The notes: a model not told the origin generated them from the letters alone. A stretch of 46,717 bases of DNA from Bigelowiella natans CCMP2755 (GCA_000320545.1 ADNK01001381.1:1-46717), one strand, 5' to 3'; shown: positions 20,872 through 34,022, numbered from the stretch's first letter. Numbers and translations are program-made.

Positions 20872-22982
20872 CTAAAGAGCTTTCTCTTCAACCAATTTGT
20901 TGAATACATTGATTAGAAAGCATTTGTCCTTGATTAATTTGCAAATCTCATCAGAATTGTCCATATCGGAGCTCATTTCATGGATTTTCCGCACGAGAAG
21001 GATTGCAGTCCGGGGATTCATATTGACTCTCGTGATTGCAGCTGAAATGTTACACAGTGTATCATCGCAGAACGAGATCAACAAGAATTTAATCTAACGA
21101 AAAGATGCATATGTACCCTCCAGTTTTGTAAAATGGTAAGGCTTGACATTTTCCCTGATCAAAGTCTTATATTTTGAATCTTCAAAGTCATAAACTCGTT
21201 CCTTGAAAAAATTCTTAAACTTGATCTTGGGCAAACCTTCCAACTTCAGGTCTTTTTTCTGTTGAAGAATGAATTAGATTACTAAACCAAACTCGATGAC
21301 GAATCATATGCATGTACACAGAGAAAACACCAAAACCGCACATTGGAGTCGCAGCCCTTCACTTCGATCGGAGTCAAAGATGTTGTGAGAATGTGCAGCC
21401 TTGGGTTTAGGATCATGAGATTCTTGAAGAGTTTTTCACGATCCTCGGCTTTAACGCCTTCTACGTCGTCGATTATCTGGGTACATGAATATGGTTGCAT
21501 AAGAATGTTCAAAGTTGGGAATTAACAGCATTAGCACCAAGAGTATCGGAGGATTATCTTTCTTCCTAAAGAATCCCTTGATCAATCCATAAGGATCACA
21601 ATTTTCAGCTTTTTTCGTGGGAAATGATTCATCCTCGATGAGATTCTCCATGAAATTTTGCATCACTCCGTCTCCACTCTTTGCCCCAGTAACCTAAGCC
21701 ATGCAGAAAACACTTTCAGCAGAAGTCAAATTTTGTGCGTGAGTGCATGATGCCTCTACCCAAAAGATGCCATCAGGTCCTTCTGTGTCGTAGAGACTTA
21801 GACGCCAGGAAATGAACTTAGCCACTGAAGTCTTTCCTATATTCTTAGGTCCTGTGATTTGCACCCAGCGATGACGGATTGAGTTTTTATCATCAAATTG
21901 CAGAGCCGAGTGTAGATTCCGTTGAAGTTGCAGATAGTGATCAGTTCCCCACTTAAGCTGCTCGCAGAAAGGATCGGGATAGAATTTAATTGGGGGAGCA
22001 GGATGCCATGTTTTGATTTTTGCGAAGGGGGGGAAATAAGGTTTAAATGAGAATGCGATGTCATGATTCCCATCTTTAGGCAGCAAAAGACACTCTTTGA
22101 CCTCCTCATAAAGCTGTTCTGCCCTTTTAGTCAACTTTTTTGTCCGACTTTTGTATTCATGATACACATTACGTATTCTAGGGTCTGCTATGTATTTCTC
22201 AAGATTATCAGCCTTTTTTATCAAAACGCCAGCCTCTTTTTTGAGGTCACTGGCCATGTCTTTTAGCTTTTCCTTTGCAGATTTGAATGAGGTAGAAACT
22301 GTAGCACCGCACAGCAATCTCTCGAAAAAAACCGTCTGAAATATCTGCACAGCTTCATTACCCAGTAATTTATTCTTATTACAAACTATTATGTGATCGA
22401 CTACTTTCGAATCAACAAATCCTTTAGCTACAGCTTCGCTCCCGCATGCCGCCAGCATTAATACTTTTAAAGAGCACATCTTTGGAGTTCTTTTCGTCTC
22501 CATAATCAATCGGGAAAACTCATCAGGGCTCACGTATACTGCCTTTCCCCCAGGATTGTCGGATTCGAACTCGAGGTAAGTTGTCTTTCCTTCAGGGTGG
22601 TCGGGTTCCAACTTGAGGCCATGTTGTTCTCTGCAATGAGAACCCACTAGTAATGCGAAGCATTTCGATCGCAGAGCTCTAGAGACATTCTCTTTAGTAG
22701 CTCTCCACTTGGATATGTGAAGCTTGCTGCGTTTGACAACGGTACCATCTTCGTGTTTCGTACAATTCACTTTGCTCATATCTTGCAACATTGTGAGATC
22801 TTTCTCTAAATCCAGCATGGACTTCGGTTTGTCTAATGGCAAAGCAAATGCAAATGCCAAGTGCGCAGGTACTTCCTGAAAAAGATTACAATGCTAAACC
22901 GCATAGATAAAGGTGAACATTAAAGATGGAGACAGATAGTCAACATTCTCTTTACTCCCCCCCCCCCCCCTCCCCCTCTCTC

Positions 22983-23068
<86 letters not shown>

Positions 23069-26000
23069 GCGTGTGCGTGTGCTTGTGTTCTATCTTGCCA
23101 AAAACTAAATATGCTTTCGTGGAACCGAATGGTACCTTAGTGTTTATGAGCGGTTTCACCCAAGCTTCCAATTTCGCATCAAAATCAGTGGCGTTTTTAG
23201 CGTTACGAAGCTGCGATCCTCGTTCCACCCACATTAAATCAATAAACCTGGGTATTAGGATATTAACCCAGCAAAGATTATGTTAGAGACGAAATACAAT
23301 ATCGATCTACTTACACAGATATGCAACGTATAACAAGACATGAATCAAAACTTGACGGTACTCTTCGAAAGTGATTCTTCCACTTGTAATAGCAACAGGA
23401 GATAGGCTCTTCATCAGGCTTGTGCACTCAACGCTTTCCGAAGGATACAATAACTGTAAAATGTAGAATCTTTATTATACTCCTGCTTTCTTCCCCTCTC
23501 CCCCTCCTCTCTCTCGTTGTGTGTAGTATGCATGCATGCATGCATGTGTTTGTGTATGTGTGTGTGTGAATGTAAATGTTTGAACCTCTTCATTCTATCA
23601 ACGTTACTTATACATTCGTATACATCCTCTTTCGTGCTCATAACATGCATCATATATCCAGGTACCTTAAATATTTGCGTTACGATCGTCAATTTGATGA
23701 ACTTCTTGCTGTTATCGTTGCCAAAGTCTTGCGATGAGGATTCACACCGTTGGGTAAATGTGTAACTGCAAGGAATTTATCATGATAACGGAGAATGGAA
23801 AATGTTCTATTCAACATGAAGTCGCTGTAATCTTTCTTTTTTCAATTTCCCATATGTTTAGATTGTCAATCTAATTAACTTCACATTCTACGTATCAAGT
23901 TACCGAAGTGTTGCGTTTTCGAAGAAAATGTCGTAGAACTGCTCCCAATACCGTAAATGCGTTATTTCCACCATTTTGGGGGCTGTATCGGAGGTTTTCT
24001 CAGAGACAACCTTGGTTTCCTTGTTTTTGCAGGCTTTTTCCCACTTGTCATACTTCACGGGATACCTCATCGAACTGCAAATACATGGATAAGATCCTCT
24101 GGTTAAGTCAACAACTCATAGTAGGAAACTGATCTAGCTGCAACATAAATACTACTACAGATTCTGAAATCTTTTGACACAGTCATGCACACACGTACCA
24201 ATCGAAAAGAAGTACGCTGAAATCCAGGGCGTCATTGTTTTTGTACGGCCACTTGTGTACACTTCTGGCGATCTCCAGAATGAATTTCAATATCCTATTG
24301 GACACAATTTGCTGTGGATCTACTATCTTGCGCGTTTTGCTCAATATTCACAAGAGGCACTAATGTAATACCAGTACGTACCTCGCACAGTGTCCAATTT
24401 CAGACAGAACTTCGACATTTATTGCCATTACATGCCTTTTCCTCCCACTAAGAACATATATCTTACATTATATTTTTGTGAGGTTGCGATTGTGGAAGTG
24501 TTAGGCTATTTCAAGACCTTTTGTTTCTTTCTAGCATTGAGGTACTAATCCGGAAACGCAAGGGTTCAAGATATATTTCCGCTTTTCCTTTGCCAAAAAT
24601 CTGATGTAAACAAAGGAGAGAGATAAGTTCAGAGTGACCACAAAATCCTTGCATATGTAAAACATGTCGAGAGTAGAAACTGCCGAATTCTACCTGTTCC
24701 TCTAAGATCATTGGGCTTGTAGCTCCTGAACATAAAAAACAATCGTACAAAAAAATGGGAATATGAGAAGCTTGTGATTACTACTTTTCACTCTCCTCCA
24801 CACACTTTTGATTACCTCCCCGAAGTTCTTTTGTGCGTTTGCTTTCAGACGAGAGCTCCGTGACTGAGTCGTGCACATACCGCATAAACAAATATACAGA
24901 TGGGGAGAGGAATTGTATACATTACTGGACATCGAAGATGTAGAAATTTAATATGTGACTCGAAAATTATGAAGAACACTCTTCTCTGCTAGAGATTGAT
25001 TTTAAACTATGGTAATTGGCATAATAATTCACCAATACCTATGTTCCCGGAAAATGTCTCAAAATAAGACCGCGGCCGAAGGCGTTTGAAGAGTAAGGAA
25101 AACATTCCAACAACTGTGTGCTCCTTTCGATCCATGCTTTCTCCCTTGGCTTGCATCATCGAAGGCACCAAATACTTTTCCGTTCCACCGATCTTGCATA
25201 ATATCATGAACCTATTTGGAGATGCAAAGGAGACGAAGATAGCCGAACAATTAAGGGAGAACCATATTCTTCGCGATTGATGAAAACTACACCGGTATTT
25301 TCGTTTTTCTTCACCAAGAACAGAGGAATAACAGTGTCAATCCATATTGTTTACCAAGCGTCGTACATGACATAAGCATTGGTGATTCCCAATCCAAGTT
25401 CTTTTTTCACGTTTACATTTGGAAAATAAATCAATGCACTACTTCTGTAATATCTTCCGGCTGAACTCATATAGCCTCTTATTTTCGGCTACTTTTGGAC
25501 CATCATCAGTGAGCATTAGGTGTTTTAACACCACATCGTGTATGACTCCAATATCGAGAAATCTACATTATAGGAATATCACACATCTCAATTCAAGTTT
25601 GACTAACAATTTTAATTAGCACTTCAGAATATGTATCTTCCCCAATGTTTGGGCTCTAAATCCATGAAATGTGCTGAACATGATATTGCTTCACTTACTC
25701 ATCCACAAGCTTTCCGTGCTGAGCAAACCTAAATATGTTGGAAGAGACTGTCTGATGAAATCTCATTGGACACAGAGCAATAAAACGAATAAATATGAAT
25801 TTTATAATGTATGTATTACAGCTCTTGATTCTTGTATAATTTCTTGTGCAAGCGCCGATCAAATATCAGCTTCTTCACCAGATCAACGAGGTGTTGCGGT
25901 CGCATTACGATGTGCTGTCGATTAGCATATTCATCATGCGATTTTTACGTAAGTTTCAGAGAAGATTCGATAGGACTGATACTCACGTCTCGCAGGCCAT

Positions 26001-26709
26001 CTTCGTCGAAATATATCGCTACTCCTAGATCATAAAATCTGAAATTTGAGATTTCACGGATGCTATGAGGAAAGTGAGAAATTATTATTCTTCATTTCGC
26101 AACTTACTTTTGCAACATCAAGCGCACTTCTCCCTTATCAACGATCCCACGCTTAAAACATATCTCTTCAATCGATTCCAAAGTAAATATCGCCTGTTCT
26201 GTGGAAATCAGATCGTCGCATACTTTTGTCCATTGGGATGGTACTTCCTCATTTGCCTAGTGTGTCATCCCACAGATGAGTTGGAAGTGCGAAAATGAAC
26301 CATCACGTATCAGTATAATTGTGGCGTAGTTTACCAAATATAAATGAATATTCATCTCCTTTACCTTTGGATTGTTCTTCAGAGTTTCCATCACCTCGTT
26401 ACGCAGTTCCATAATCGTACTGTGCACTTTCTTATCACTCGATCGGAACCTAAAGGCGATGATAACAATACGTGAGATGATGAAATCGGCTAAAGGGTCA
26501 AGACAGAGCAAATCAGCACGAACGACGATGATTGACTGGACAGCATTAAATCCGCTGTACTTGCTGTCAGCAGGAAAGAACACCAAATCCGCAGGTTCAG
26601 AAGACTTTTCTGGGCGCCAGCGTTTACATCGAGGCCACGGAAAGTGTTCAAAGCCCTCAAAAACCTGACGCACACGCATACACACACACACACACACACA
26701 CACGCGCAC

Positions 26710-26753
<44 letters not shown>

Positions 26754-26960
26754 GTTAGAGTAAGAGAGATGTCATATGTAATTACATTGTGGCCTACTAA
26801 TATACCTCTCTCGCCATTTCTGTGATTTGCTGGTCGATTGAGTCGAGGACCTCCAAGAGCGCCTTTTTAGTGGATGGTATGCAAACGTTAACAACGATAC
26901 ATAACTGTACGATACTTACTAACACGTGTATACAATACATAGGAGTACGATACTTAAAAC

Positions 26961-27004
<44 letters not shown>

Positions 27005-30000
27005 TGTGTAGCATGTGTGTTTGAGAGCATTTCTTACCTCTGGGTCATTATATTCTTCGAGTTTATCGATCTTCATTCCCACAAGTATTATTGGCGCCCC
27101 GGGAGCAAACGTGCGAATGTTTTGAAGCCAGAATCTCAGGTATTCTTCTGCCTTCTCTTTCTGCTTCGCTGCCTCGTTACCTAATAGTTTACGTTAGACA
27201 GTATGTAATCTCTTAAAACGTTTTTGTCGTACCTTCTTTCTCTCTTTCTCTCTCCCTCTTTCTCCCTCTTTCTCTCTTTCTCTCTCTTTCTCTCTTTCTC
27301 CCTCTTTATCTATCTGTATAAGTTCATGAAATATGCAAAGGTGCACCCAGCTATTGTAGCCTTTGGATCAGATAGCTTAAAACAAATGATACCTTTGGCA
27401 TCATTCTCTCTCCCAAGGAACTCCTCAAGGGAAAACACCACCATATAGAGGCAATTGTGGTTCAGAAACATTACATGCGATGTGTAGAACACCTCCTGCC
27501 CTGCAAAATCCCAGACCGACACCTGCATTCATTAGGAGGAGATAATTGGTCGAGTGATCACGCAAAACATTCGTAGTCACACACACATACACACACACAC
27601 ACACACAGGCACATACCCGGATAGCTTCCGGATTCTTAAGGGATTCCTGTATAAGCCCGGGTTTTAGTTCCTAATGGTGTTTCAAGGATAATCAGCAAAT
27701 CGCGCTTGGGATGTAATATGGACGTAATCAGTTGCAACTTCACTACATTCTCATCAAGACTCATTCGGCACCTTGAGAAGCGTCTCCTCGACTTCTCCAC
27801 TTCGTTTGTGCAGTTTCTTTGATTCCGTGGCATCTTCATCGACTATACTTTTCTTTGTTGAAGAACCTTTGATATGCTCTTTCCCTTCCACAGCTACTAC
27901 TGCTGCTGCTGTCTCCGTATCCGTTTTCGCATTCTTCACATCGCTGGGAGACTTCCCTTTTTTGTCATATCTGCAAGGAATCTGGGATAAAATCATACAC
28001 CGCACAATGGTCATTGGCATGCATGCAGTATATCTTAATCACATTGACGACTTCATTCAGAAATATTTGGATCTGTCTACCTTCGAAGTATCATTCTCCT
28101 CCTCCTGTGGCCTCTGACTCTTTAAATAGGCCAATCCCAATGCTCTCTCATGATTACCTCCTATGCAAACGACATTTTGACAATTATCCACAGGACAATT
28201 ACTTTACAAAATAAATGGAACTTTACGAACATATCGTAATTACCATGTTCGATAGTCTTAAATATAGTTTCTCTATTGTCGTCTCCCTTAACATCCTCAT
28301 CTGTTTTCTCCACGGTTACGTCATGGACGGTGACATCTGCCAGCACCTGCATATGATAGTGTACAAGGGAAACTGCATGAATACATAAATATTTCCTTTT
28401 CAAAAAACGATTATTTTTTGTATCTATGACATCATAACCGTTGATTCGACGTCGCAAAACTCTTCGCCCTTCAAAGCCTTGTATAACGTCGTTTTACCAG
28501 TATGTTCTTTACCAACTATCATCACGCGAGATCGTCGCCACGGTACCGTGATAGCAAATAGCCTTTTAATAGCCTCCATAGAGAGGGAGTTGTCTGCATC
28601 CTGAGCGCACAAAAAGCCGAATGATGTAGGAGGGCGCAACAAAAGGATTGGAAACGAGAGAAAAGGGACAACAGTTAATCAATTCTTGTTGTCGGGATAT
28701 AATGGATAGCCAAACGCCTTATTCAAACATCAAACATTGTTTATATTTCGTATTTCGTATCTGAGAATTTTAAGACAATCCCTGTCGTTTTGAACATACG
28801 GAATATTTAATCGCATTAGGCATGTACCAAAAATACATCGCATTGGGCATGTACTAAATCATACATTGTTGTTTTGGTTCGCCGTCCTAAGGATTCTGTC
28901 GATACGCTCATTTGCTAAATCCGACGCAGTCCAACCTGGCAAATTCAGGTGCGCGCAGCAAATGATGATAATTCGAACGAAACAGAAAAACAACGAGCGA
29001 ACAAGCGGTCAACTAATTAACCAACATTCTTCGACAACTAGCACCAAACACCGCAATCACCCATAAGCACATACAAGCACACACAAGCACACACGAATAT
29101 AAACATACAAACATATGCACTCAAATAATTAAACACTCTCTCTAACACTCTCAAATCCCTCTTGTTTTTTACATCATCATTACTTGCATCCTCATGATTG
29201 GTATCAAGATTGGTATTTGTCGTTCGTTGATGATGGGACAGTTTGATGGTTTCATTTTCCTCCTCCTCCTCCTCCTCCTCCCCCTCTTTCTTCCTTTGCT
29301 ACTACTCATGCTCTCAATTTCACATGACATCTTCATGCTCATTTGGCGTGATGATTCCTGCTCTTCTTTGGTGTCATTCTATCCCTCAATGTGCATGAAA
29401 GAATCCTGCCGCACTAACTCGAATATTATTACTCACCGTTATTATCCTTCGCCTCGATGTTCGCCTTCGACTCAACCAGATACGTCACGATCCTTTCGTG
29501 TTAACGTCCCGACGCATAGAACAGAGGGGTTTCACCTGGCAAAACAAAGCACCCAACAAATCATCATTCGGAAATGACAGTACATCAAACAACAAACAAA
29601 AGAATCTGCTAAGTTACCAGCCTCATCAAAAAGGCTAACACCAAATGCTATGTACTTCCACAAATGCACACTGTTAAATGCACATCGGCCATTCATGACA
29701 TGAGCAGTATTGGCATCCTCATGATTGGTATCAAGATCGGCATTTGTCGTTCGTTGATGATGGGACAGTTTGATGGTTTCATTTTCCTCCTCCTCTTTCT
29801 CCTCTTTCTTCCTTTGCTACTACTTGTACTCTCATTTTCACATGGCATCTTCATGCTCATTTGGTGTAATGATTCCTGCTCTTCATTGGTGTCATTCTAT
29901 CCCTCAATGTACATGAAAGAATCCTGCCGCACTAACTCGAATGTTCTTACTCACCGAAACTATTCTTCGCCTCGATGTTCGCCTTCGACTCAACCAGATA

Positions 30001-32189
30001 CGTCACGATCCTTTCGTGTCCATGAAATGACGTATAGAACAGAGGGGTTTCACCTGGCAAAACAAAGCACCCAACAAATCATCATTCGGAAATGACAGTA
30101 CATCAAACAACAAACAAAAGAATCTGCTAAGTTACCAGCCTCATCAAAAAGGCTAACACCAAATGCTATATAACTCCACAAATGCATACTGTTAAATGCA
30201 CATCGGCTCTTCATAACATGAGCAGTATTGGCATCCTCATGATTGGTATCAAGATCGGCATTTGTCGTTCGTTGATGATGGGACAGTTTGATGGTTTCAT
30301 TTTCCTCCTCTTCCTCCTTCTCCTCCTCCTCCTCTTTCTTCCTTTATTACTACTTGTACTCTCATTTTCACATGGCATCTTCATAATCATTTAATGTGAT
30401 GATTCCTGCTCTTCATTGGTGTCATTCTATCCCTCAATGTACATGAAAGAATCCTGCCGCACTAACTCGAATTTTCTTACTCACCGAAACTATTCTTCGC
30501 CTCGATGTTCGCCTTCGACTCAACCAGATACGTCACGATCCTTTCGTGTCCATGAAATGACGTATAGAACAGAGGGGTTTCACCTGGCAAAACAAAGCAC
30601 CCAACAAATCATCATTCGGAAATGACAGTACATCAAACAACAAACAAAAGAATCTGCTAAGTTACCAGCCTCATCAAAAAGGCTAACACCAAATGCTATA
30701 TAACTCCACAAATGCATACTGTTAAATGCACATCGGCTCTTCATAACATGAGCAGTATTGGCATCCTCATGATTGGTATCAAGATCGGCATTTGTCGTTC
30801 GTTGATGATGGGACAGTTTGATGGTTTCATTTTCCTCCTCCTCTTTCTCCTCTTTCTTCCTTTGCTACTACTCATGCTCTCATTTTCACATGACATCTTC
30901 ATGCTCATTTGGTGTAATGATTCCTGCTCTTCTTTGGTGTCATTCTATCCCTCAATGTACATGAAAGAATCCTGCCGCACTAACTCGAATGTTCTTACTC
31001 ACCGAAACTATTCTTCGCCTCGATGTTCGCCTTCGACTCAACCAGATACGTCACGATCCTTTCATGTCCACGTCCCGACGCATAGAACAGAGGGGTCGTA
31101 CCTGGCAAAACAAAGCACCAAACAAATCATCATTCGGAAATGACAGTACATCAAACAACAAACAAAAGAATCTGCTAAGTTACCAGCCTCATCAAAAAGG
31201 CTAACACCAAATGCTATATAACTCCACAAATGCATACTGTTAAATGCACATCGGCTCTTCATAACATGAGCAGTATTGGCATCCTCATGATTGGTATCAA
31301 GATCGGCATTTGTCGTTCGTTGATGATGGGACAGTTTGATGGTTTCATTTTCCTCCTCTTCCTCCTTCTCCTCCTCCTCCTCTTTCTTCCTTTATTACTA
31401 CTTGTACTCTCATTTTCACATGACATCTTCATAATCATTTAATGTGATGATTCCTGCTCTTCATTGGTGTCATTCTATCCCTCAATGTACATGAAAGAAT
31501 CCTGCCGCACTAACTCGAATATTATTACTCACCGTTAATATTCTTCGCCTCGATGTTCGCCTTCGACTCAACCAGATACGTCACGATCCTTTCGTGTCCA
31601 TGAAATGACGCATAGAACAGAGGGGTTTCACCTGGCAAAACAAAGCACCCAACAAATCATCATTCGGAAACAACGGTACATCAAACAACAAACAAAAGAA
31701 TCTGCTAAGTTACCAGCCTCATCAAAGAGGCTAACACCAAACACTACACAACTGCCCAAATACACACTTAAGTACACATCAGTTATTCTTAACATGAGTT
31801 TTATTTGCATCCTCATGGTCAACATCAATGAAGGTTGCTGCTGTTTCCTACAAATCCACTAAACTTTAGCCTCTGCATGAAGTGACATCATCATTCGAAC
31901 TCAAGCTCATTGTGCTTCATGAAAAATGTCAACTCCGTCGTCCCCCATCACGAACTTTGCTTGTTTCATGACTGCTCCGTGCTCTTTTCCCATTCATTTT
32001 TTTCTCGTCAACCCTTCGAACATTCTTCGCCCAGAGTCTCGCTATCCCTGCCTCTCTCCGTTCCCAACCAAACTAACCATTTTTATCCTTCTGTTCGATG
32101 TCTGCATTTTTCTTGATCAGCAGTTTCAGCGTAGTTAGGTCATTCTTCTCCACAGCTTCCCAGACCTCCTTGCTCAGTCCGCCTCCCAT
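20872..32189 (-). CDS. ROCO-family multidomain protein: N-myristoylation motif - ankyrin repeats - ROC GTPase - COR - unknown region - CHAT (caspase-like) protease - STAND-type P-loop NTPase; >25 exons
   Basis: Exon 1 is MGGGLSKEVWEAVEKNDL...ADIEQKDKN, followed by five ankyrin exons and a cap GWTASDLA. ROC: G1 VMIVGKEHTGKTT (~28490-28520), G3 VWDFAGQEVFY (~27490-27520), G4 PIILVGMKID (~27065-27095). COR: EEVPSQW and FYDLGVAIYF. CHAT: ATKENVSRAL..LLVGSHC..LEFE..LMLAACGSE..FFERLLCGATV. STAND: Walker A ITGPKNIGKTS and Walker B LL|IIDDVE. Most exon phases I checked between COR and CHAT are compatible; one donor (~23316) is ambiguous. Confidence 0.8.
29186..31817 (-). repeat. Tandem array of five exon+intron units (periods 518/530/518/530 bp), each with a 99-nt single-ankyrin exon
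   Basis: Exons at 31533-31631, 31003-31101, 30485-30583, 29955-30053 and 29437-29535. All are bounded by ccag|GT...G|gtgagt (phase 1-1), and the introns are near-identical. Confidence 0.95.
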
Positions 32190-32429
32190 TCTTCTTCCAG
32201 TTGCCGAATAGTTGGAATGTAACCCCAATGCAAATCTCGAGAAATCTCACCACATGTAACATTGCGATAACTGACACACCTTGATCACCAGGGCGTCGTC
32301 AGGGCGTCATCCGGGTATTTTGGAACAAATGCTGGAGGTTTTGGAGTTGCGACATGAATTTTCCATGGATTTATTAATGACCAACTGCGGAGTCGAGTAT
32401 GCTCAGTATTGTCTTCATTGTTCCTCAGG

Positions 32430-34022
32430 ATGGCTGCCGCACGGCCGGGGTTCCGGCATGGCGTCGCCCGCATTCGCTCATCGTCCGTGGCCGCTGCAGC
32501 TGCTGCTACCTCTTCCCATCCGATAATACGAACCCGTCAAGAATGTGACGTGATAATTGTTGGGGGTGGGCACAACGGAATGGGTAGTGACAGATTCGAA
32601 TGCTCTTCCTTCTTCTTCCTTCCGAGCATGAGGTACATGTGTCCTAAATAACATATCGACAGTCTCGGCCGCATATCTAGCCCGTGCTGGTTTGGATGTC
32701 ATGGTTCTCGAACGTCGTGGGATTTTAGGAGGAGCGGCAGTGACGGAGGAGGTCGTGAAGGGCTTTCGATTCTCCCGTGCATCGTATCTAGCGGGTTTGC
32801 TGCGGCCCAGCGTCATCCAAGACCTCAGCCTGCACAAACATGGACTCAAGTGCTGTGCATTATTGAAAATATGTGAGAGGGGGGAAGAAGGCGCAAAAAT
32901 GCGCCGCTTGTTGCGCGGCAATCCGCAACTACACATTTTACTTCAACTAATACGATTGTTCAAAGGTACCTTGTGCGCGATCCTTCTTCCTTCACACCAT
33001 CTCTTGTTGACGGACCTCTCGGTACAACAAACCATTCCTCATGACTTCAGCATTCTGAGGGTGGAAGAGCTTTAGTTGGGCATCAGGCCCATGCTAGCAT
33101 GGCACGTCTACCGTATAATAGTCCTGATGTTGTTGAAACAGGTGGGCGCAGCTTGCTTCTCGGCTCGGACATGGATGCGACGTGTGCCTCAATTGCACAA
33201 TTCTCCGAGAAAGATTCGAAGGTAAAATGCTCTCTTTTCTCAAAGAAGAGTAAGGAGGTGGGGTGTAGTCTGAAGCGCGTGGTTGCCTTTTTTGCAAGGG
33301 TGGGAGCGTGTACACGCGGTCTGTGGTTGGCACTTCTCGTTAGATTTTGCGTGCCTCACCGTACATACCAAACAACAACAACAACAACAACAACATGTGC
33401 ATATTCCAAGAACTGAGTTCGCACTCAGTAAGTTTACTTGTATCAATTTTGAAAAATCTCTCAGGTCTACCCCCTCTACGAGGAGTTTCTGGCGGAGTGC
33501 CGAGAGATTCTCCGCCCGCTGCTCGACGGCCCCCCTCCTGATCCATTCCAGGGCCGCTATTACGAGCGCAAGCAGGCCGCGACCACGCTGTATTCCCTAA
33601 TCAAAAACGCCGCGCGGCACCGAGGGACTCTGGGCGCTCTATATGTCAGGGAGATTAACAACTCCTCCCCTTTTCACCGTCCCCCCTTCTCATCTGATCA
33701 TTGCTTCATTTTCCTCATTGGCAGTGGTGGTGGTTGGTAGTCTAATATCTCCTCCTCCTCCTCTTCCTCCTCCACCCGTTTCATCCAGGAACTACTGACC
33801 GCCCCTGCCTGCCATGTGCTGGATAAATGGTTCGAGAGCGACATGTTAAAGGCCACACTGGCGTGCGACGCAGTGATTGGAGCTATGATATCTCCCCGAG
33901 ACGTCGGATCAGGTTGCTGCTCCTGTGTTACCATTCCGTTGTTTATAATACATCGTTGTCGTGACATAGTGTGAGGAGATCCACGCTCATCACATCACCT
34001 CATCACACACACACACAATATT

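What the first reader, a model, noticed from the sequence alone, without database searches (positions are those of the whole stretch)
29437..31631. One-exon-one-ankyrin cassette array that varies almost only at the binding surface: a natural DARPin-like diversifying receptor
Seen in the sequence: five 99-nt phase-1 exons. In gene order they encode GETPLFYASFHGHERIVTYLVESKANIEAKNIN, GTTPLFYASGRGHE...AKNSF, GETPLFYTSFHGHE...AKNSF (twice) and GETPLFYASGR*HE...AKDNN. The scaffold ERIVTYLVESKANIEAK is identical at the DNA level. Multi-nucleotide non-synonymous changes cluster at the residue after G, the two residues before GH and the beta-turn; one further A/T change lies in helix 1. Established: these clustered sites are the ankyrin ligand-contact positions randomised in DARPins, and brown-algal (Ectocarpus) ROCO genes have LRR repeats encoded by shuffled single-repeat exons. 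Inference: an ankyrin version of that design, i.e. a sensor diversified by exon duplication, conversion and/or skipping, as expected for non-self recognition.
Basis: partly seen in the sequence, partly recalled or inferred. Interest (0 to 1): 0.9.

Follow-up and report, generated by a model that had tools for sequence, protein, structure and literature searches.

The report
Hypervariable one-exon ankyrin cassette array
A gene of the marine alga Bigelowiella natans builds the binding end of a GTPase/caspase-like multidomain protein from near-identical one-repeat ankyrin exons that differ almost only on the predicted binding face, the way fast-evolving immune-type sensors of brown algae and fungi do, but what it binds is unknown and this copy carries a stop codon in its fifth cassette.

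Summary
There are five 99-nt phase-1/phase-1 ankyrin exons on the minus strand, in ~524-bp tandem units with a 1048-bp higher-order period. The scaffold DNA is identical in all five, and the fifth cassette has an in-frame TAA.

A paralog on contig C2355 has four more cassettes with the same frozen scaffold and entirely different residues at the same positions.

Across the nine cassettes the exons are three times more diverged than the introns between them (pi 0.118 vs 0.041). All 24 variable nucleotides lie in nt 2-37 and 89-97. Five of the six DARPin-randomised positions are hypervariable. Three further arrays on other contigs show variation peaking at the same positions.

RNA contigs show cassette-to-cassette splicing.

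Downstream on the same strand lie Roc GTPase exons and a CHAT-like caspase-fold domain with a STAND P-loop. The genome is Bigelowiella natans.

Best reading: germline diversification by tandem exon duplication, conversion or unequal exchange, and diversifying selection on the ankyrin binding face. Cassette skipping, somatic diversification and an immune role are not shown.

It is a new variant of known kinds: brown-algal LRR-ROCO exon cassettes and fungal NLR ankyrin repeats with high internal conservation.

The scan has already noted this cassette family on several other pieces of this same genome.

The parts
32078..32189 (-). Exon 1: ATG at 32189-32187. It encodes MGGGLSKEVWEAVEKNDLTTLKLLIKKNADIEQKDKN plus the first base of a Gly codon. 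This is an N-terminal capping half-repeat with an MGxxxS N-myristoylation-type start.
   Evidence: Sequence read; ORF. The splice joint 31631/32078 is seen in an RNA contig. There is a weak Pfam Ank match. The myristoylation motif is my inference from the consensus.
31632..32077 (-). Intron 1 (446 nt). Its last ~100-190 nt are shared with the inter-cassette introns, so it marks one edge of the original duplication unit.
   Evidence: Alignment; joint.
31533..31631 (-). Cassette A1: GETPLFYASFHGHERIVTYLVESKANIEAKNIN.
   Evidence: Pfam Ank 31.1 bits.
31003..31101 (-). Cassette A2: GTTPLFYASGRGHERIVTYLVESKANIEAKNSF.
   Evidence: Pfam Ank 28.7 bits. The A2->A3 joint is in an RNA contig.
30485..30583 (-). 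Cassette A3: GETPLFYTSFHGHERIVTYLVESKANIEAKNSF.
29955..30053 (-). Cassette A4, identical to A3 in DNA. The 3' half of its upstream intron is also identical to that of A3.
29437..29535 (-). Cassette A5: GETPLFYASGR*HERIVTYLVESKANIEAKDNN. An in-frame TAA at 29501-29503 (GGA->TAA, two changes) replaces the conserved Gly of GH.
29536..31532 (-). The four inter-cassette introns: 31102-31532 (431 nt), 30584-31002 (419), 30054-30484 (431) and 29536-29954 (419). The range given also spans cassettes A2-A4. Each intron holds a purine-rich (GAG/GAA)n tract whose 12-nt length difference defines the 518/530 unit types. Pairwise divergence is 0.9-5.3%.
28936..29436 (-). Tail intron (501 nt). Its first ~270 nt are homologous to the 5' part of the unit introns, so it marks the other edge of the duplication unit.
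   Evidence: (family D2 copy 29171-29306).
28864..28935 (-). C-terminal capping half-repeat exon: (G)WTASDLANERIDRILRTANQNNN. It starts in phase 1 and ends in phase 0, and is 100% identical in the paralog.
   Evidence: (joints at 28935 and 28864/28599).
28437..28599 (-). First Roc exon, with the P-loop IVGKEHTGKT.
   Evidence: Pfam Roc positions 1-29. RNA contigs cover it and run on into the next exon (records 17 and 18).
27393..27522 (-). Roc exon with switch II (WDFAGQE). The splice sites are predicted, not confirmed.
   Evidence: Pfam Roc positions 57-91, 31.3 bits against a cut-off of 27; also found.
27038..27180 (-). Roc exon with a G4-like motif (VGMKID; VGTKID in the paralog). The splice sites are predicted, not confirmed.
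   Evidence: Pfam Roc positions 89-119, 16.6 bits; comparison with the paralog.
21697..22893 (-). Large open frame encoding a CHAT-like caspase-fold domain (His86 and Cys150 invariant among homologs), followed by the Walker A motif (GPKNIGKTS) of a STAND-type NTPase. It lies on the same strand. That it belongs to the same transcript is inferred, not shown.
   Evidence: Remote homologs carry Pfam CHAT plus NACHT, NB-ARC or AAA_16. The alignment shows the invariant residues. The public model jgi/Bigna1/135602 covers only this half of the paralog.

Best explanation
The array is the N-terminal target-binding module of a large multidomain protein of Bigelowiella natans. The protein's order is: myristoylation-type start, N-cap, five one-exon ankyrin repeats, C-cap, Roc GTPase, and probably a CHAT caspase-like protease and a STAND ATPase.

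Each ankyrin repeat is one 99-nt exon in phase 1 at both ends. Whole exon-plus-intron units (~524 bp) can therefore be duplicated, deleted or exchanged by unequal crossing-over or gene conversion without breaking the frame.

These exchanges keep the introns and the structural scaffold of the repeat almost identical (concerted evolution). Selection keeps or drives apart the few codons that form the ankyrin binding face: the residue after G, helix-1 positions 6-7, the two residues before GH, and the beta-turn.

The result is a germline, evolutionary diversification of binding specificity between cassettes, between paralogs and probably between strains. It is not a somatic one.

Shown here: the anatomy, the splicing, the paralog, the exon-greater-than-intron divergence, its position on the binding face, and the mosaic introns.

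Inferred: that the variable face binds a fast-changing ligand (non-self, e.g. viral), that the Roc and CHAT/STAND parts transmit the signal, and that this copy is still functional despite the stop in cassette 5.
For: Anatomy and exact sequences.

Paralog on C2355, with cassettes E..FY..RK..DNG, R..SF..RK..DND (twice) and W..IY..EE..DKW on the same DNA scaffold. The flanks of the two contigs are not homologous, so these are paralogs and not haplotigs. Only these nine exons exist at DNA level in the genome.

Rates:
- Exon pi is 0.118 against intron pi 0.041. In B alone it is 0.086 against 0.013.
- pN at the a-priori DARPin positions is 0.449, against scaffold pS 0.059.
- Of the 12 variable codons only 2 are purely synonymous.
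- A2 and A4 differ at 10 of 99 nt, although their partner introns differ by 0.9-2.9% (P <= 8e-4).

Replication:
- Within-array entropy in four independent arrays (23 cassettes) averages 0.95 bits at DARPin positions against 0.23 elsewhere (p = 0.0036).
- The intron-less relatives on C3237/C3236 have 17 of 18 segregating sites non-synonymous, at the equivalent positions.

Conversion or unequal exchange: the intron halves give incongruent groupings, and the A3/A4 and B2/B3 exons are identical.

Splicing and expression: joints and a B1->B2 junction in RNA contigs.

Context:
- Roc exons.
- CHAT plus STAND homologs with a conserved His/Cys dyad.
- The family is genome-wide: at least 150 scored cassette-like hits out of 448-566 candidates, on about 60 contigs.

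Literature for the two analogous systems: PMC3341825, PMC11378527, PMC4986451.
Against: - Cassette 5 of this copy carries a stop. Unless it is skipped, the product is a ~180-aa ankyrin stub.
- A-versus-B differences in the Roc-side exons are almost all non-synonymous (e.g. 10 amino-acid changes from 11 nt differences). That is what neutral decay of one copy would also give.
- The sample is small (9 cassettes, several of them identical duplicates), and the locus was picked because it looked striking.
- In one of the other arrays (C3059, 4 cassettes) the variation is spread more evenly along the exon, and pN at the DARPin positions (0.098) does not exceed silent pS.
- pS inside the hypervariable codons is itself high (saturated multi-nucleotide changes), so a classical per-codon dN/dS cannot be read there. 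The argument rests on intron and scaffold silent sites as the neutral yardstick.
- No ligand, phenotype or induction data exist.
- COR was not detected.
- Continuity of the ANK-Roc half with the CHAT-STAND half is not shown by RNA for this locus, and the public gene model splits them.
Confidence: 0.72

Rival explanations
1. Decaying duplicate. The window copy (A) is a recently duplicated pseudogene. The clustered changes are neutral or relaxed-constraint divergence at unconstrained surface residues, and no selection for diversity is acting.
For: There is an in-frame TAA in cassette 5. A/B differences in the Roc-side exons are nearly all non-synonymous. Exon identity (96-98.7%) is barely above the overall A/B identity of 95.5%.
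Against: Neutral sites cannot diverge faster than introns. Yet the patch codons differ about 6-10 times more than the introns and silent scaffold sites. The pattern is equally strong within the intact paralog B (exon pi 0.086 against intron 0.013). Variation also peaks at the same positions in the arrays on C1548, C777 and C3059 and in the intron-less C3237/C3236 arrays, although in C3059 pN does not exceed silent pS. Copy A being a pseudogene is compatible with the main explanation for the family.
Confidence: 0.1
2. Isoform-level (DSCAM-like) diversification. Because every cassette is symmetric in phase, the cell makes many receptor variants by skipping or choosing cassettes during splicing. 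The stop-bearing cassette 5 is normally skipped.
For: All cassettes are 99 nt and in phase 1 at both ends. A5 would have to be skipped for a full-length product. One RNA contig shows a non-standard product at the end of the array, a retained intron piece joined to the cap exon through a cryptic donor (record 18). Alternative splicing of LRR cassettes is reported for brown-algal ROCO genes (PMC11378527).
Against: The RNA contigs laid here show only consecutive junctions (exon1->A1, A2->A3, B1->B2, a cassette followed by a B2/B3-type cassette, cap->Roc) and no skipping joint. Only 7 raw RNA reads were laid, so the power is very low.
Confidence: 0.1
3. Ordinary scaffold protein. The ankyrin array binds endogenous partners, and its fast evolution reflects something other than pathogen sensing, for example self/mating recognition, intragenomic conflict, or simple drift of a large expanding family.
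For: No functional data exist. Ankyrin-ROCO architectures are found in organisms where no immune role is known (PMC11378527). Only some of the many cassette arrays in this genome sit near a Roc exon.
Against: Strong site-specific diversification of a binding face, copy-number change, and a linked caspase-like/STAND module are together the hallmark of non-self sensors in fungi, plants and animals (PMC4986451). Endogenous partners would be expected to hold the interface constant.
Confidence: 0.15
4. Assembly artefact. The tandem array is a mis-assembly of a single exon or of reads from the two paralogs.
For: Short-read contigs of other DNA runs break up inside the array. Their word depths are about 1.5-2.2 times what the assembly's copy count predicts, so the exact copy number is uncertain.
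Against: The cassettes differ from each other in specific patches and have distinct intron types. The two loci have different, non-homologous flanks. Exon-exon junctions between distinct cassettes are present in RNA contigs.
Confidence: 0.03

Closest known systems
Brown-algal (Ectocarpus, Saccharina) LRR-ROCO candidate receptors with one LRR per exon (Zambounis et al. 2012, PMC3341825; Teng et al. 2024, PMC11378527)
   Same: One structural repeat per short symmetric exon. Tandem arrays lie upstream of a Roc GTPase. Exons are duplicated and shuffled. Diversifying selection is confined to a few residues of the binding face. The genes form a multigene family.
   Different: The repeat type is ankyrin (99 nt, phase 1) and not LRR (72 nt, phase 2). 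The lineage is Rhizaria (a chlorarachniophyte), not a stramenopile. The downstream part appears to include a CHAT protease and a STAND ATPase instead of the plain LRR-Roc-COR arrangement. COR was not detected here. Alternative splicing of cassettes, reported for the algae, was not seen here.
Fungal NLR/STAND proteins with highly internally conserved ANK, TPR or WD repeats (Paoletti et al. 2007; Dyrka et al. 2014, PMC4986451)
   Same: The repeats within a gene are near-identical (here 73-100%, mean 82% amino-acid identity). The repeat number differs between copies. There is concerted evolution together with positive selection at positions on the concave face and beta-hairpin of the ANK domain. 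The array is linked to a STAND-type NTPase and a death or protease effector.
   Different: In fungi the repeats lie in one continuous exon at the C-terminus of an NLR. Here each repeat is its own exon with a ~420-nt co-duplicated intron, the array is N-terminal, and a Roc GTPase lies between the sensor and the STAND part.
DARPin libraries (designed ankyrin repeat proteins; Binz et al. 2003, from my own knowledge; general principle in PMC8683736)
   Same: A fixed consensus framework carries diversity at repeat positions 2, 3, 5, 13 and 14. These correspond to exon residues 32, 33, 2, 10 and 11, which are the most variable ones here.
   Different: This is natural and evolutionary, not combinatorial. 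DARPin position 33 (exon residue K30) is invariant here. Helix-1 residues 6-7 (DARPin positions 9-10, fixed in DARPins) do vary. Each locus has only a handful of variants.
LRRK2/LRRK1-type ROCO proteins with N-terminal ankyrin repeats
   Same: Ankyrin repeats lie N-terminal to a Roc GTPase in one polypeptide.
   Different: Those ankyrin repeats are individually diverged, are not encoded one per exon as identical cassettes, and show no hypervariable face. They carry LRR, COR, kinase and WD40 domains, not CHAT/STAND.

Membership tests
Ankyrin repeat (Pfam PF00023) | 33-residue helix-turn-helix/beta-hairpin motif G-x-TPL-x-x-A-x-x-x-GH...; a score above the Pfam gathering cut-off. | tested here: met
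   Single cassettes score 25.9-31.1 bits against a cut-off of 21.1, covering profile positions 2-32/33, so one exon equals one repeat in register. The intron-less relative matches ankyrin-1 and DARPin structures at E of 1e-30 to 1e-104.
ROCO proteins | Roc (Ras of complex proteins) GTPase domain. | tested here: met
   Three collinear exons match Pfam Roc positions 1-29, 57-91 (31.3 bits, above the cut-off of 27) and 89-119. They carry a P-loop GKEHTGKT, DFAGQ and a G4-like MKID.
ROCO proteins | COR domain directly C-terminal of Roc. | tested here: inconclusive
   Pfam COR-A found no match in this contig in the exon-by-exon genome search, and the open frames between Roc and CHAT matched no Pfam family.
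Brown-algal type cassette-exon ROCO receptors | Each repeat is encoded by its own exon of constant length and symmetric phase, in a tandem array upstream of Roc. | tested here: met
   Five 99-nt exons in phase 1 at both ends, followed by the cap exon and the Roc exons. The same holds on C2355, C1548, C3059 and C777.
Brown-algal type cassette-exon ROCO receptors | Diversifying selection restricted to the ligand-binding face. | tested here: met
   Contact-site pN is 0.449, against scaffold pS 0.059 and intron pi 0.041. Entropy peaks at residues 2, 6-7, 10-11 and 31-33 in four arrays. No PAML-type site model was run.
Brown-algal type cassette-exon ROCO receptors | Alternative splicing that yields different cassette combinations. 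| tested here: inconclusive
   Only consecutive junctions were seen in one set of RNA contigs, and only 7 raw RNA reads were laid.
Fungal-type highly internally conserved (HIC) repeat receptors | High identity between repeats of one gene, together with repeat-number polymorphism. | tested here: met
   Amino-acid identity is 73-100%, mean 82%, slightly below the 85% threshold used by Dyrka et al. The counts are 5 against 4 cassettes in A and B, and 10 against 5 full 34-aa repeats in C3237 and C3236.
Fungal-type highly internally conserved (HIC) repeat receptors | The repeat array sits in the same protein as a NOD/STAND NTPase. | tested here: inconclusive
   A CHAT-like domain plus a Walker-A/STAND start lies downstream on the same strand. 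Its homologs carry NACHT, NB-ARC or AAA_16. Transcript continuity is not shown for this locus, and the public model 135602 covers only that half.
DARPin-like diversity pattern | Variation confined to repeat positions 2, 3, 5, 13, 14 and 33 on a fixed framework. | tested here: met
   Five of the six positions are hypervariable (hypergeometric p = 0.006). Position 33 (K30) is invariant, and residues 6-8 also vary. The position list comes from my own knowledge of Binz et al. 2003.

The most novel reading that the evidence does not exclude
The cassette arrays are the variable sensors of a protist innate-immune repertoire (ANK-Roc-CHAT-STAND). The repertoire is reshuffled fast enough, by mitotic unequal exchange or conversion between cassettes or by regulated cassette skipping, to give clonal or strain-level receptor diversity against giant viruses or parasites of chlorarachniophytes. 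That would be an independent invention of a cassette-based variable receptor system in Rhizaria.
Probability: 0.12. Interest if true: 0.9.

Novelty: new variant of a known kind. Interest (0 to 1): 0.62.

Why it matters
Two lineages are known to make fast-evolving intracellular sensors from near-identical repeats that vary only on the binding face. Brown algae use LRR exons on ROCO proteins, and fungi use ANK, TPR or WD repeats on NLRs. This locus combines features of both, in a third and distant lineage: an ankyrin repeat, one exon per repeat, a Roc GTPase, and a caspase-like/STAND module nearby.

That points to convergent evolution of modular variable receptors in unicellular eukaryotes. It also offers a tractable case. 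B. natans is cultured, several strains are sequenced, and giant viruses infecting marine chlorarachniophytes have been isolated (preprint listed; whether they infect B. natans I did not check).

The frozen scaffold with natural variation at the DARPin positions is also a ready-made natural data set on which ankyrin surface residues tolerate and use diversity.

I found no paper in the searched library that describes ankyrin cassette exons or ROCO/CHAT receptors in this alga.

Tried and rejected
- TRF did not report the array because the period exceeds 500. The repeat finder did report it.
- Haplotig explanation for C2355: rejected. Homology stops at the edges of the gene.
- Reassortment of hypervariable patches within exons: a four-gamete test among five patches in nine cassettes found no violation. 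I do not claim intra-exon mosaicism.
- Templated conversion from other cassettes in the genome: a degenerate 17-mer spanning the residue 10-11 patch matched only A/B cassettes. There is no donor evidence, but this is a limited test.
- An apparent strain variant in run X12 at 30022-30033 turned out to be the B1 cassette of the paralog laid on A4.
- Copy number from DNA unitig depth is inconsistent with the assembly by 1.5-2.2 times. The tool warns that depth is not copy number, so I keep this only as a hint.
- Metagenome scans for an exon-exon junction pattern and for a 30-nt scaffold word gave no match.
- A protein search with the 132-aa open frame around cassette B4 (region 91-132) found no candidate in the permitted length range. 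This says nothing about longer transcripts.
- The look-up of encoding contigs for the public model P0041 found nothing on record.
- Pfam COR-A gave no hit in this gene.
There is therefore no AlphaFold model of this array and no whole-protein domain scan.

Full report
**1. What is there**

On the minus strand of the window lie five exon-like segments of exactly 99 nt: A1 31533-31631, A2 31003-31101, A3 30485-30583, A4 29955-30053 and A5 29437-29535. Each follows ...TTTTGCCAG and precedes GTGAGTAA. That includes the exact duplicate A3=A4 and the in-frame TAA (29501-29503) that replaces the Gly of the GH motif in A5.

The units recur with spacing 518/530/518/530, a 1048-bp two-unit higher-order repeat. 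The inter-cassette introns are 431/419/431/419 nt. TRF missed the array only because its longest period is 500. Each cassette alone matches Pfam Ank positions 2-32/33 above the gathering score, so one exon is one ankyrin repeat in register.

**2. The gene around it**

Upstream, an ATG at 32189 opens MGGGLSKEVWEAVEKNDLTTLKLLIKKNADIEQKDKN. This has an MGxxxS start of the N-myristoylation type (my inference) followed by an N-terminal capping half-repeat. It ends in phase 1 at 32078.

Downstream of A5, a 501-nt tail intron leads to a 72-nt C-cap exon, 28935-28864, encoding (G)WTASDLANERIDRILRTANQNNN. After it come exons that match Pfam Roc collinearly:
- positions 1-29, with the P-loop GKEHTGKT;
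- positions 57-91, with DFAGQ, at 31.3 bits against a cut-off of 27;
- positions 89-119, with VGMKID.

Further down the same strand a 399-aa open frame (21697-22893) has no Pfam hit itself. Its remote homologs, however, carry CHAT together with NACHT, NB-ARC or AAA_16. In the alignment His86, Cys150 (AACxS) and a Walker A GxxGxGK are invariant. That indicates a caspase-fold protease followed by the start of a STAND NTPase.

COR was not detected. I therefore call the protein Roc-containing and ROCO-like, not a proven ROCO. I have no RNA evidence that the ANK-Roc half and the CHAT-STAND half are one transcript at this locus.

There is therefore no whole-protein scan and no AlphaFold model of the array.

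**3. Organism**

The nearest database relatives of the C-terminal frame are JGI Bigelowiella natans models. Model jgi/Bigna1/135602 (P0041) is identical, over the 130 residues I printed, to my translation of the paralog on contig C2355. The 91.4-Mb genome is therefore B. natans, a chlorarachniophyte (Rhizaria).

**4. A second locus**

A DNA search of the whole genome finds only nine such exons: the five here and four on C2355. The C2355 cassettes encode GETPLFYASRKGHERIVTYLVESKANIEAKDNG, GRTPLSFASRKGHE...DND (twice) and GWTPLIYASEEGHE...DKW. The scaffold DNA is the same as here, and the residues at the same few positions are entirely different.

The two contigs are homologous only across the gene: window 21173-32923 against C2355 48990-37738. 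Their flanks are unrelated, so these are paralogs and not haplotigs. Identity is 95.5% over the ANK-Roc part (24189-32923) but only 74-79% over the CHAT-STAND part. This implies a chimeric history, or conversion of the 5' two-thirds.

**5. Is the variation pattern more than chance?**

Across the nine cassettes:
- Mean pairwise divergence is 0.118 in the exons and 0.041 in the introns between them. Within B alone the figures are 0.086 and 0.013. Exons more diverged than their own introns is the reverse of the usual situation.
- All 24 variable exon columns lie in nt 2-37 and 89-97. The 51-nt core has none (P = 0.006 at the intron rate). The exon-versus-intron comparison gives Fisher p = 2.8e-4.
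- Twelve codons vary and only two of them are purely synonymous. The others carry up to five different amino acids, usually through two or three nucleotide changes per codon.
- I mapped the DARPin randomised positions (2, 3, 5, 13, 14, 33; Binz et al. 2003, from my own knowledge) a priori onto exon residues 32, 33, 2, 10, 11 and 30. pN there is 0.449, against pS 0.059 in the rest of the exon. Five of the six positions are among the ten variable residues (p = 0.006).
- pS inside the hypervariable codons is itself high, so I use intron and scaffold silent sites as the neutral yardstick.
- The higher-order-repeat partners A2 and A4 differ at 10 of 99 nt, while their partner introns differ by 0.9-2.9% (P <= 8e-4).

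**6. Replication**

Roc-exon hits elsewhere in the genome led to further arrays of the same design. They are on C1548 (6 cassettes, period ~258), C3059 (4 cassettes, period 255) and C777 (at least 5 cassettes, period ~654). Exon divergence exceeds intron divergence in all of them, by 1.2 to 2.2 times.

Averaged over four independent arrays (23 cassettes), within-array entropy is 0.95 bits at the DARPin positions and 0.23 elsewhere (p = 0.0036). The peaks are at residues 2, 6, 7, 10, 11, 31, 32 and 33. The signal is not uniform: in the four-cassette C3059 array the variation is spread more evenly along the exon, and pN at the DARPin positions (0.098) does not exceed silent pS.

An intron-less ANK-Roc pair on C3237/C3236 has 10 against 5 full near-identical 34-aa repeats. 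There, 17 of 18 segregating nucleotides are non-synonymous, at the equivalent positions.

A protein-level search with one cassette returns at least 150 scored hits out of 448-566 candidates, on about 60 contigs. Most are isolated open frames of 38-60 aa, spaced about 180 nt apart. The design is therefore a large genome-wide family.

It is not met.

**7. How the array changes**

Intron 1 shares its last ~100-190 nt with the unit introns, and the tail intron shares its first ~270 nt with them. The unit therefore arose by tandem duplication of one exon together with parts of both flanking introns.

The 5' halves of the introns group i1 with i3 and i2 with i4, which is the 1048-bp repeat. The 3' halves make i1, i2 and i3 (near-)identical and set i4 apart. 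The A3 and A4 exons are identical although they sit in different positions of the higher-order repeat. This incongruence is direct evidence for conversion or unequal exchange with a breakpoint in mid-intron.

The introns cluster by gene: A with A and B with B, at 0.7-5.3% within a gene against 3.5-6.6% between genes. The exon scaffold, by contrast, is identical in both genes. This is concerted evolution.

Homogenisation that spares 3-7-nt patches inside a 99-nt exon can only be the outcome of selection. I therefore read the pattern as diversifying selection on the binding face.

Two further ideas found no support:
- reassortment of patches within exons (four-gamete test);
- donor templates elsewhere in the genome.

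**8. Expression**

One RNA data set (contigs) carries these joints:
- exon1->A1;
- A2->A3;
- cap->Roc;
- a loose end that is exactly the B1->B2 junction;
- a second loose end that joins a cassette to a B2/B3-type cassette.

Cassettes are therefore spliced head to tail, and at least B is expressed. No skipping joint was seen, but the power is low: only 7 raw RNA reads were laid.

One RNA contig joins a cassette ending ...EAKNRW to A-type cap and Roc exons. It does so through 242 nt of retained intron and an apparent cryptic GTAATG donor. That cassette ending is absent from the assembly, which hints at strain or allelic variation in the last cassette.

Short-read DNA contigs of two other runs fragment inside the array. 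Their depths hint at more copies than are assembled. This is weak evidence.

**9. Caveats for this copy**

A5's stop would truncate the protein after about 180 residues unless that cassette is skipped.

A-versus-B differences in the Roc-side exons are nearly all non-synonymous. That fits relaxed constraint as well as it fits fast adaptive change.

Copy A may therefore be dying while the family-level conclusion stands.

**10. Comparison with what is known**

Brown-algal ROCO genes encode each LRR in a 72-bp phase-2 exon. They show exon shuffling, positive selection at four concave-face sites and alternative splicing (PMC3341825; PMC11378527). Fungal NLRs have ANK, TPR or WD repeats with high internal conservation, repeat-number polymorphism, and positive selection on the concave or beta-hairpin face (PMC4986451).

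The present locus is an ankyrin, one-exon-per-repeat, Roc-linked version in Rhizaria. I rate it a new variant of known kinds. I found no paper describing it.

The scan itself has already noted sister arrays on other pieces of this genome. Their conclusions agree with mine. I re-derived the organism, the family-wide spread and the selection pattern independently here.

**11. Verdict**

Skipping, somatic diversity and an immune function remain untested.

Noticed in passing
G000:C3237 (L042 3190-4710, minus) and G000:C3236 (L043 4104-5276, minus): An intron-less ANK-Roc paralog pair. It has 10 against 5 full near-identical 34-aa repeats between identical flanks. 17 of the 18 segregating nucleotides are non-synonymous, at repeat residues 2, 7, 10 and 32-34. 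The hypervariable-face pattern therefore does not depend on the one-exon-per-repeat layout.
   Followed up: partly
window 28864-29989 (RNA contig record 18 of run X16): An RNA contig carries a cassette ending ...EAKNRW, which is absent from all nine assembled cassettes. It then runs through 242 nt of retained intron and is joined at 28935 to A-type cap and Roc exons, apparently through a cryptic donor GCAA|GTAATG in the tail intron. This hints at strain or allelic cassette variation and at an alternative 5' splice site.
   Followed up: partly
window 21173-24189 versus 24189-32923 (against C2355 37738-48990): The two paralogs are 95.5% identical over the promoter, ANK array and Roc part, but only 74-79% identical over the CHAT-STAND part. 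The change lies between about 23.3 and 24.2 kb. This suggests a conversion boundary or a recombinant origin.
   Followed up: partly
C2355 47327-48990 (protein P0041 = jgi/Bigna1/135602): The public gene model covers only the CHAT-STAND half of the paralog and starts at an internal Met. Either the public annotation splits one long gene, or the ANK-Roc and CHAT-STAND parts are two adjacent genes.
   Followed up: no
window 29516-29630, 30727-30830, 31167-31274: In two independent DNA runs, the word depths of short contigs inside the array are about 1.5-2.2 times what the assembly's exact copy counts predict. This may mean collapsed cassettes in the assembly or copy-number differences between strains.
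   Followed up: partly
window 30053-30343, 29535-29816 and others; C2355 40246-40641: Each inter-cassette intron holds an open frame of 94-109 aa on the coding strand. In cassette B4 a 2-nt insertion puts this frame in frame with the exon, giving 132 aa. RNA depth in the introns is zero, so this is probably a by-product of purine-rich composition, but it is unexplained.
   Followed up: no
window 28543 (RNA contig loose end, run X16): A transcript variant of the first Roc exon diverges from both A and B (...EAIKRLFSRTT...). This suggests a third expressed paralog or allele.
   Followed up: no
G000 contigs C1330, C2352, C869, C864, C2267, C324, C3665 and about 50 others: Long runs of cassette-like open frames of 38-60 aa at about 180-nt spacing, for example more than 20 on C1330 between 43.8 and 49.9 kb. 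Only some lie near a Roc exon, so the cassette design also serves other domain architectures.
   Followed up: partly
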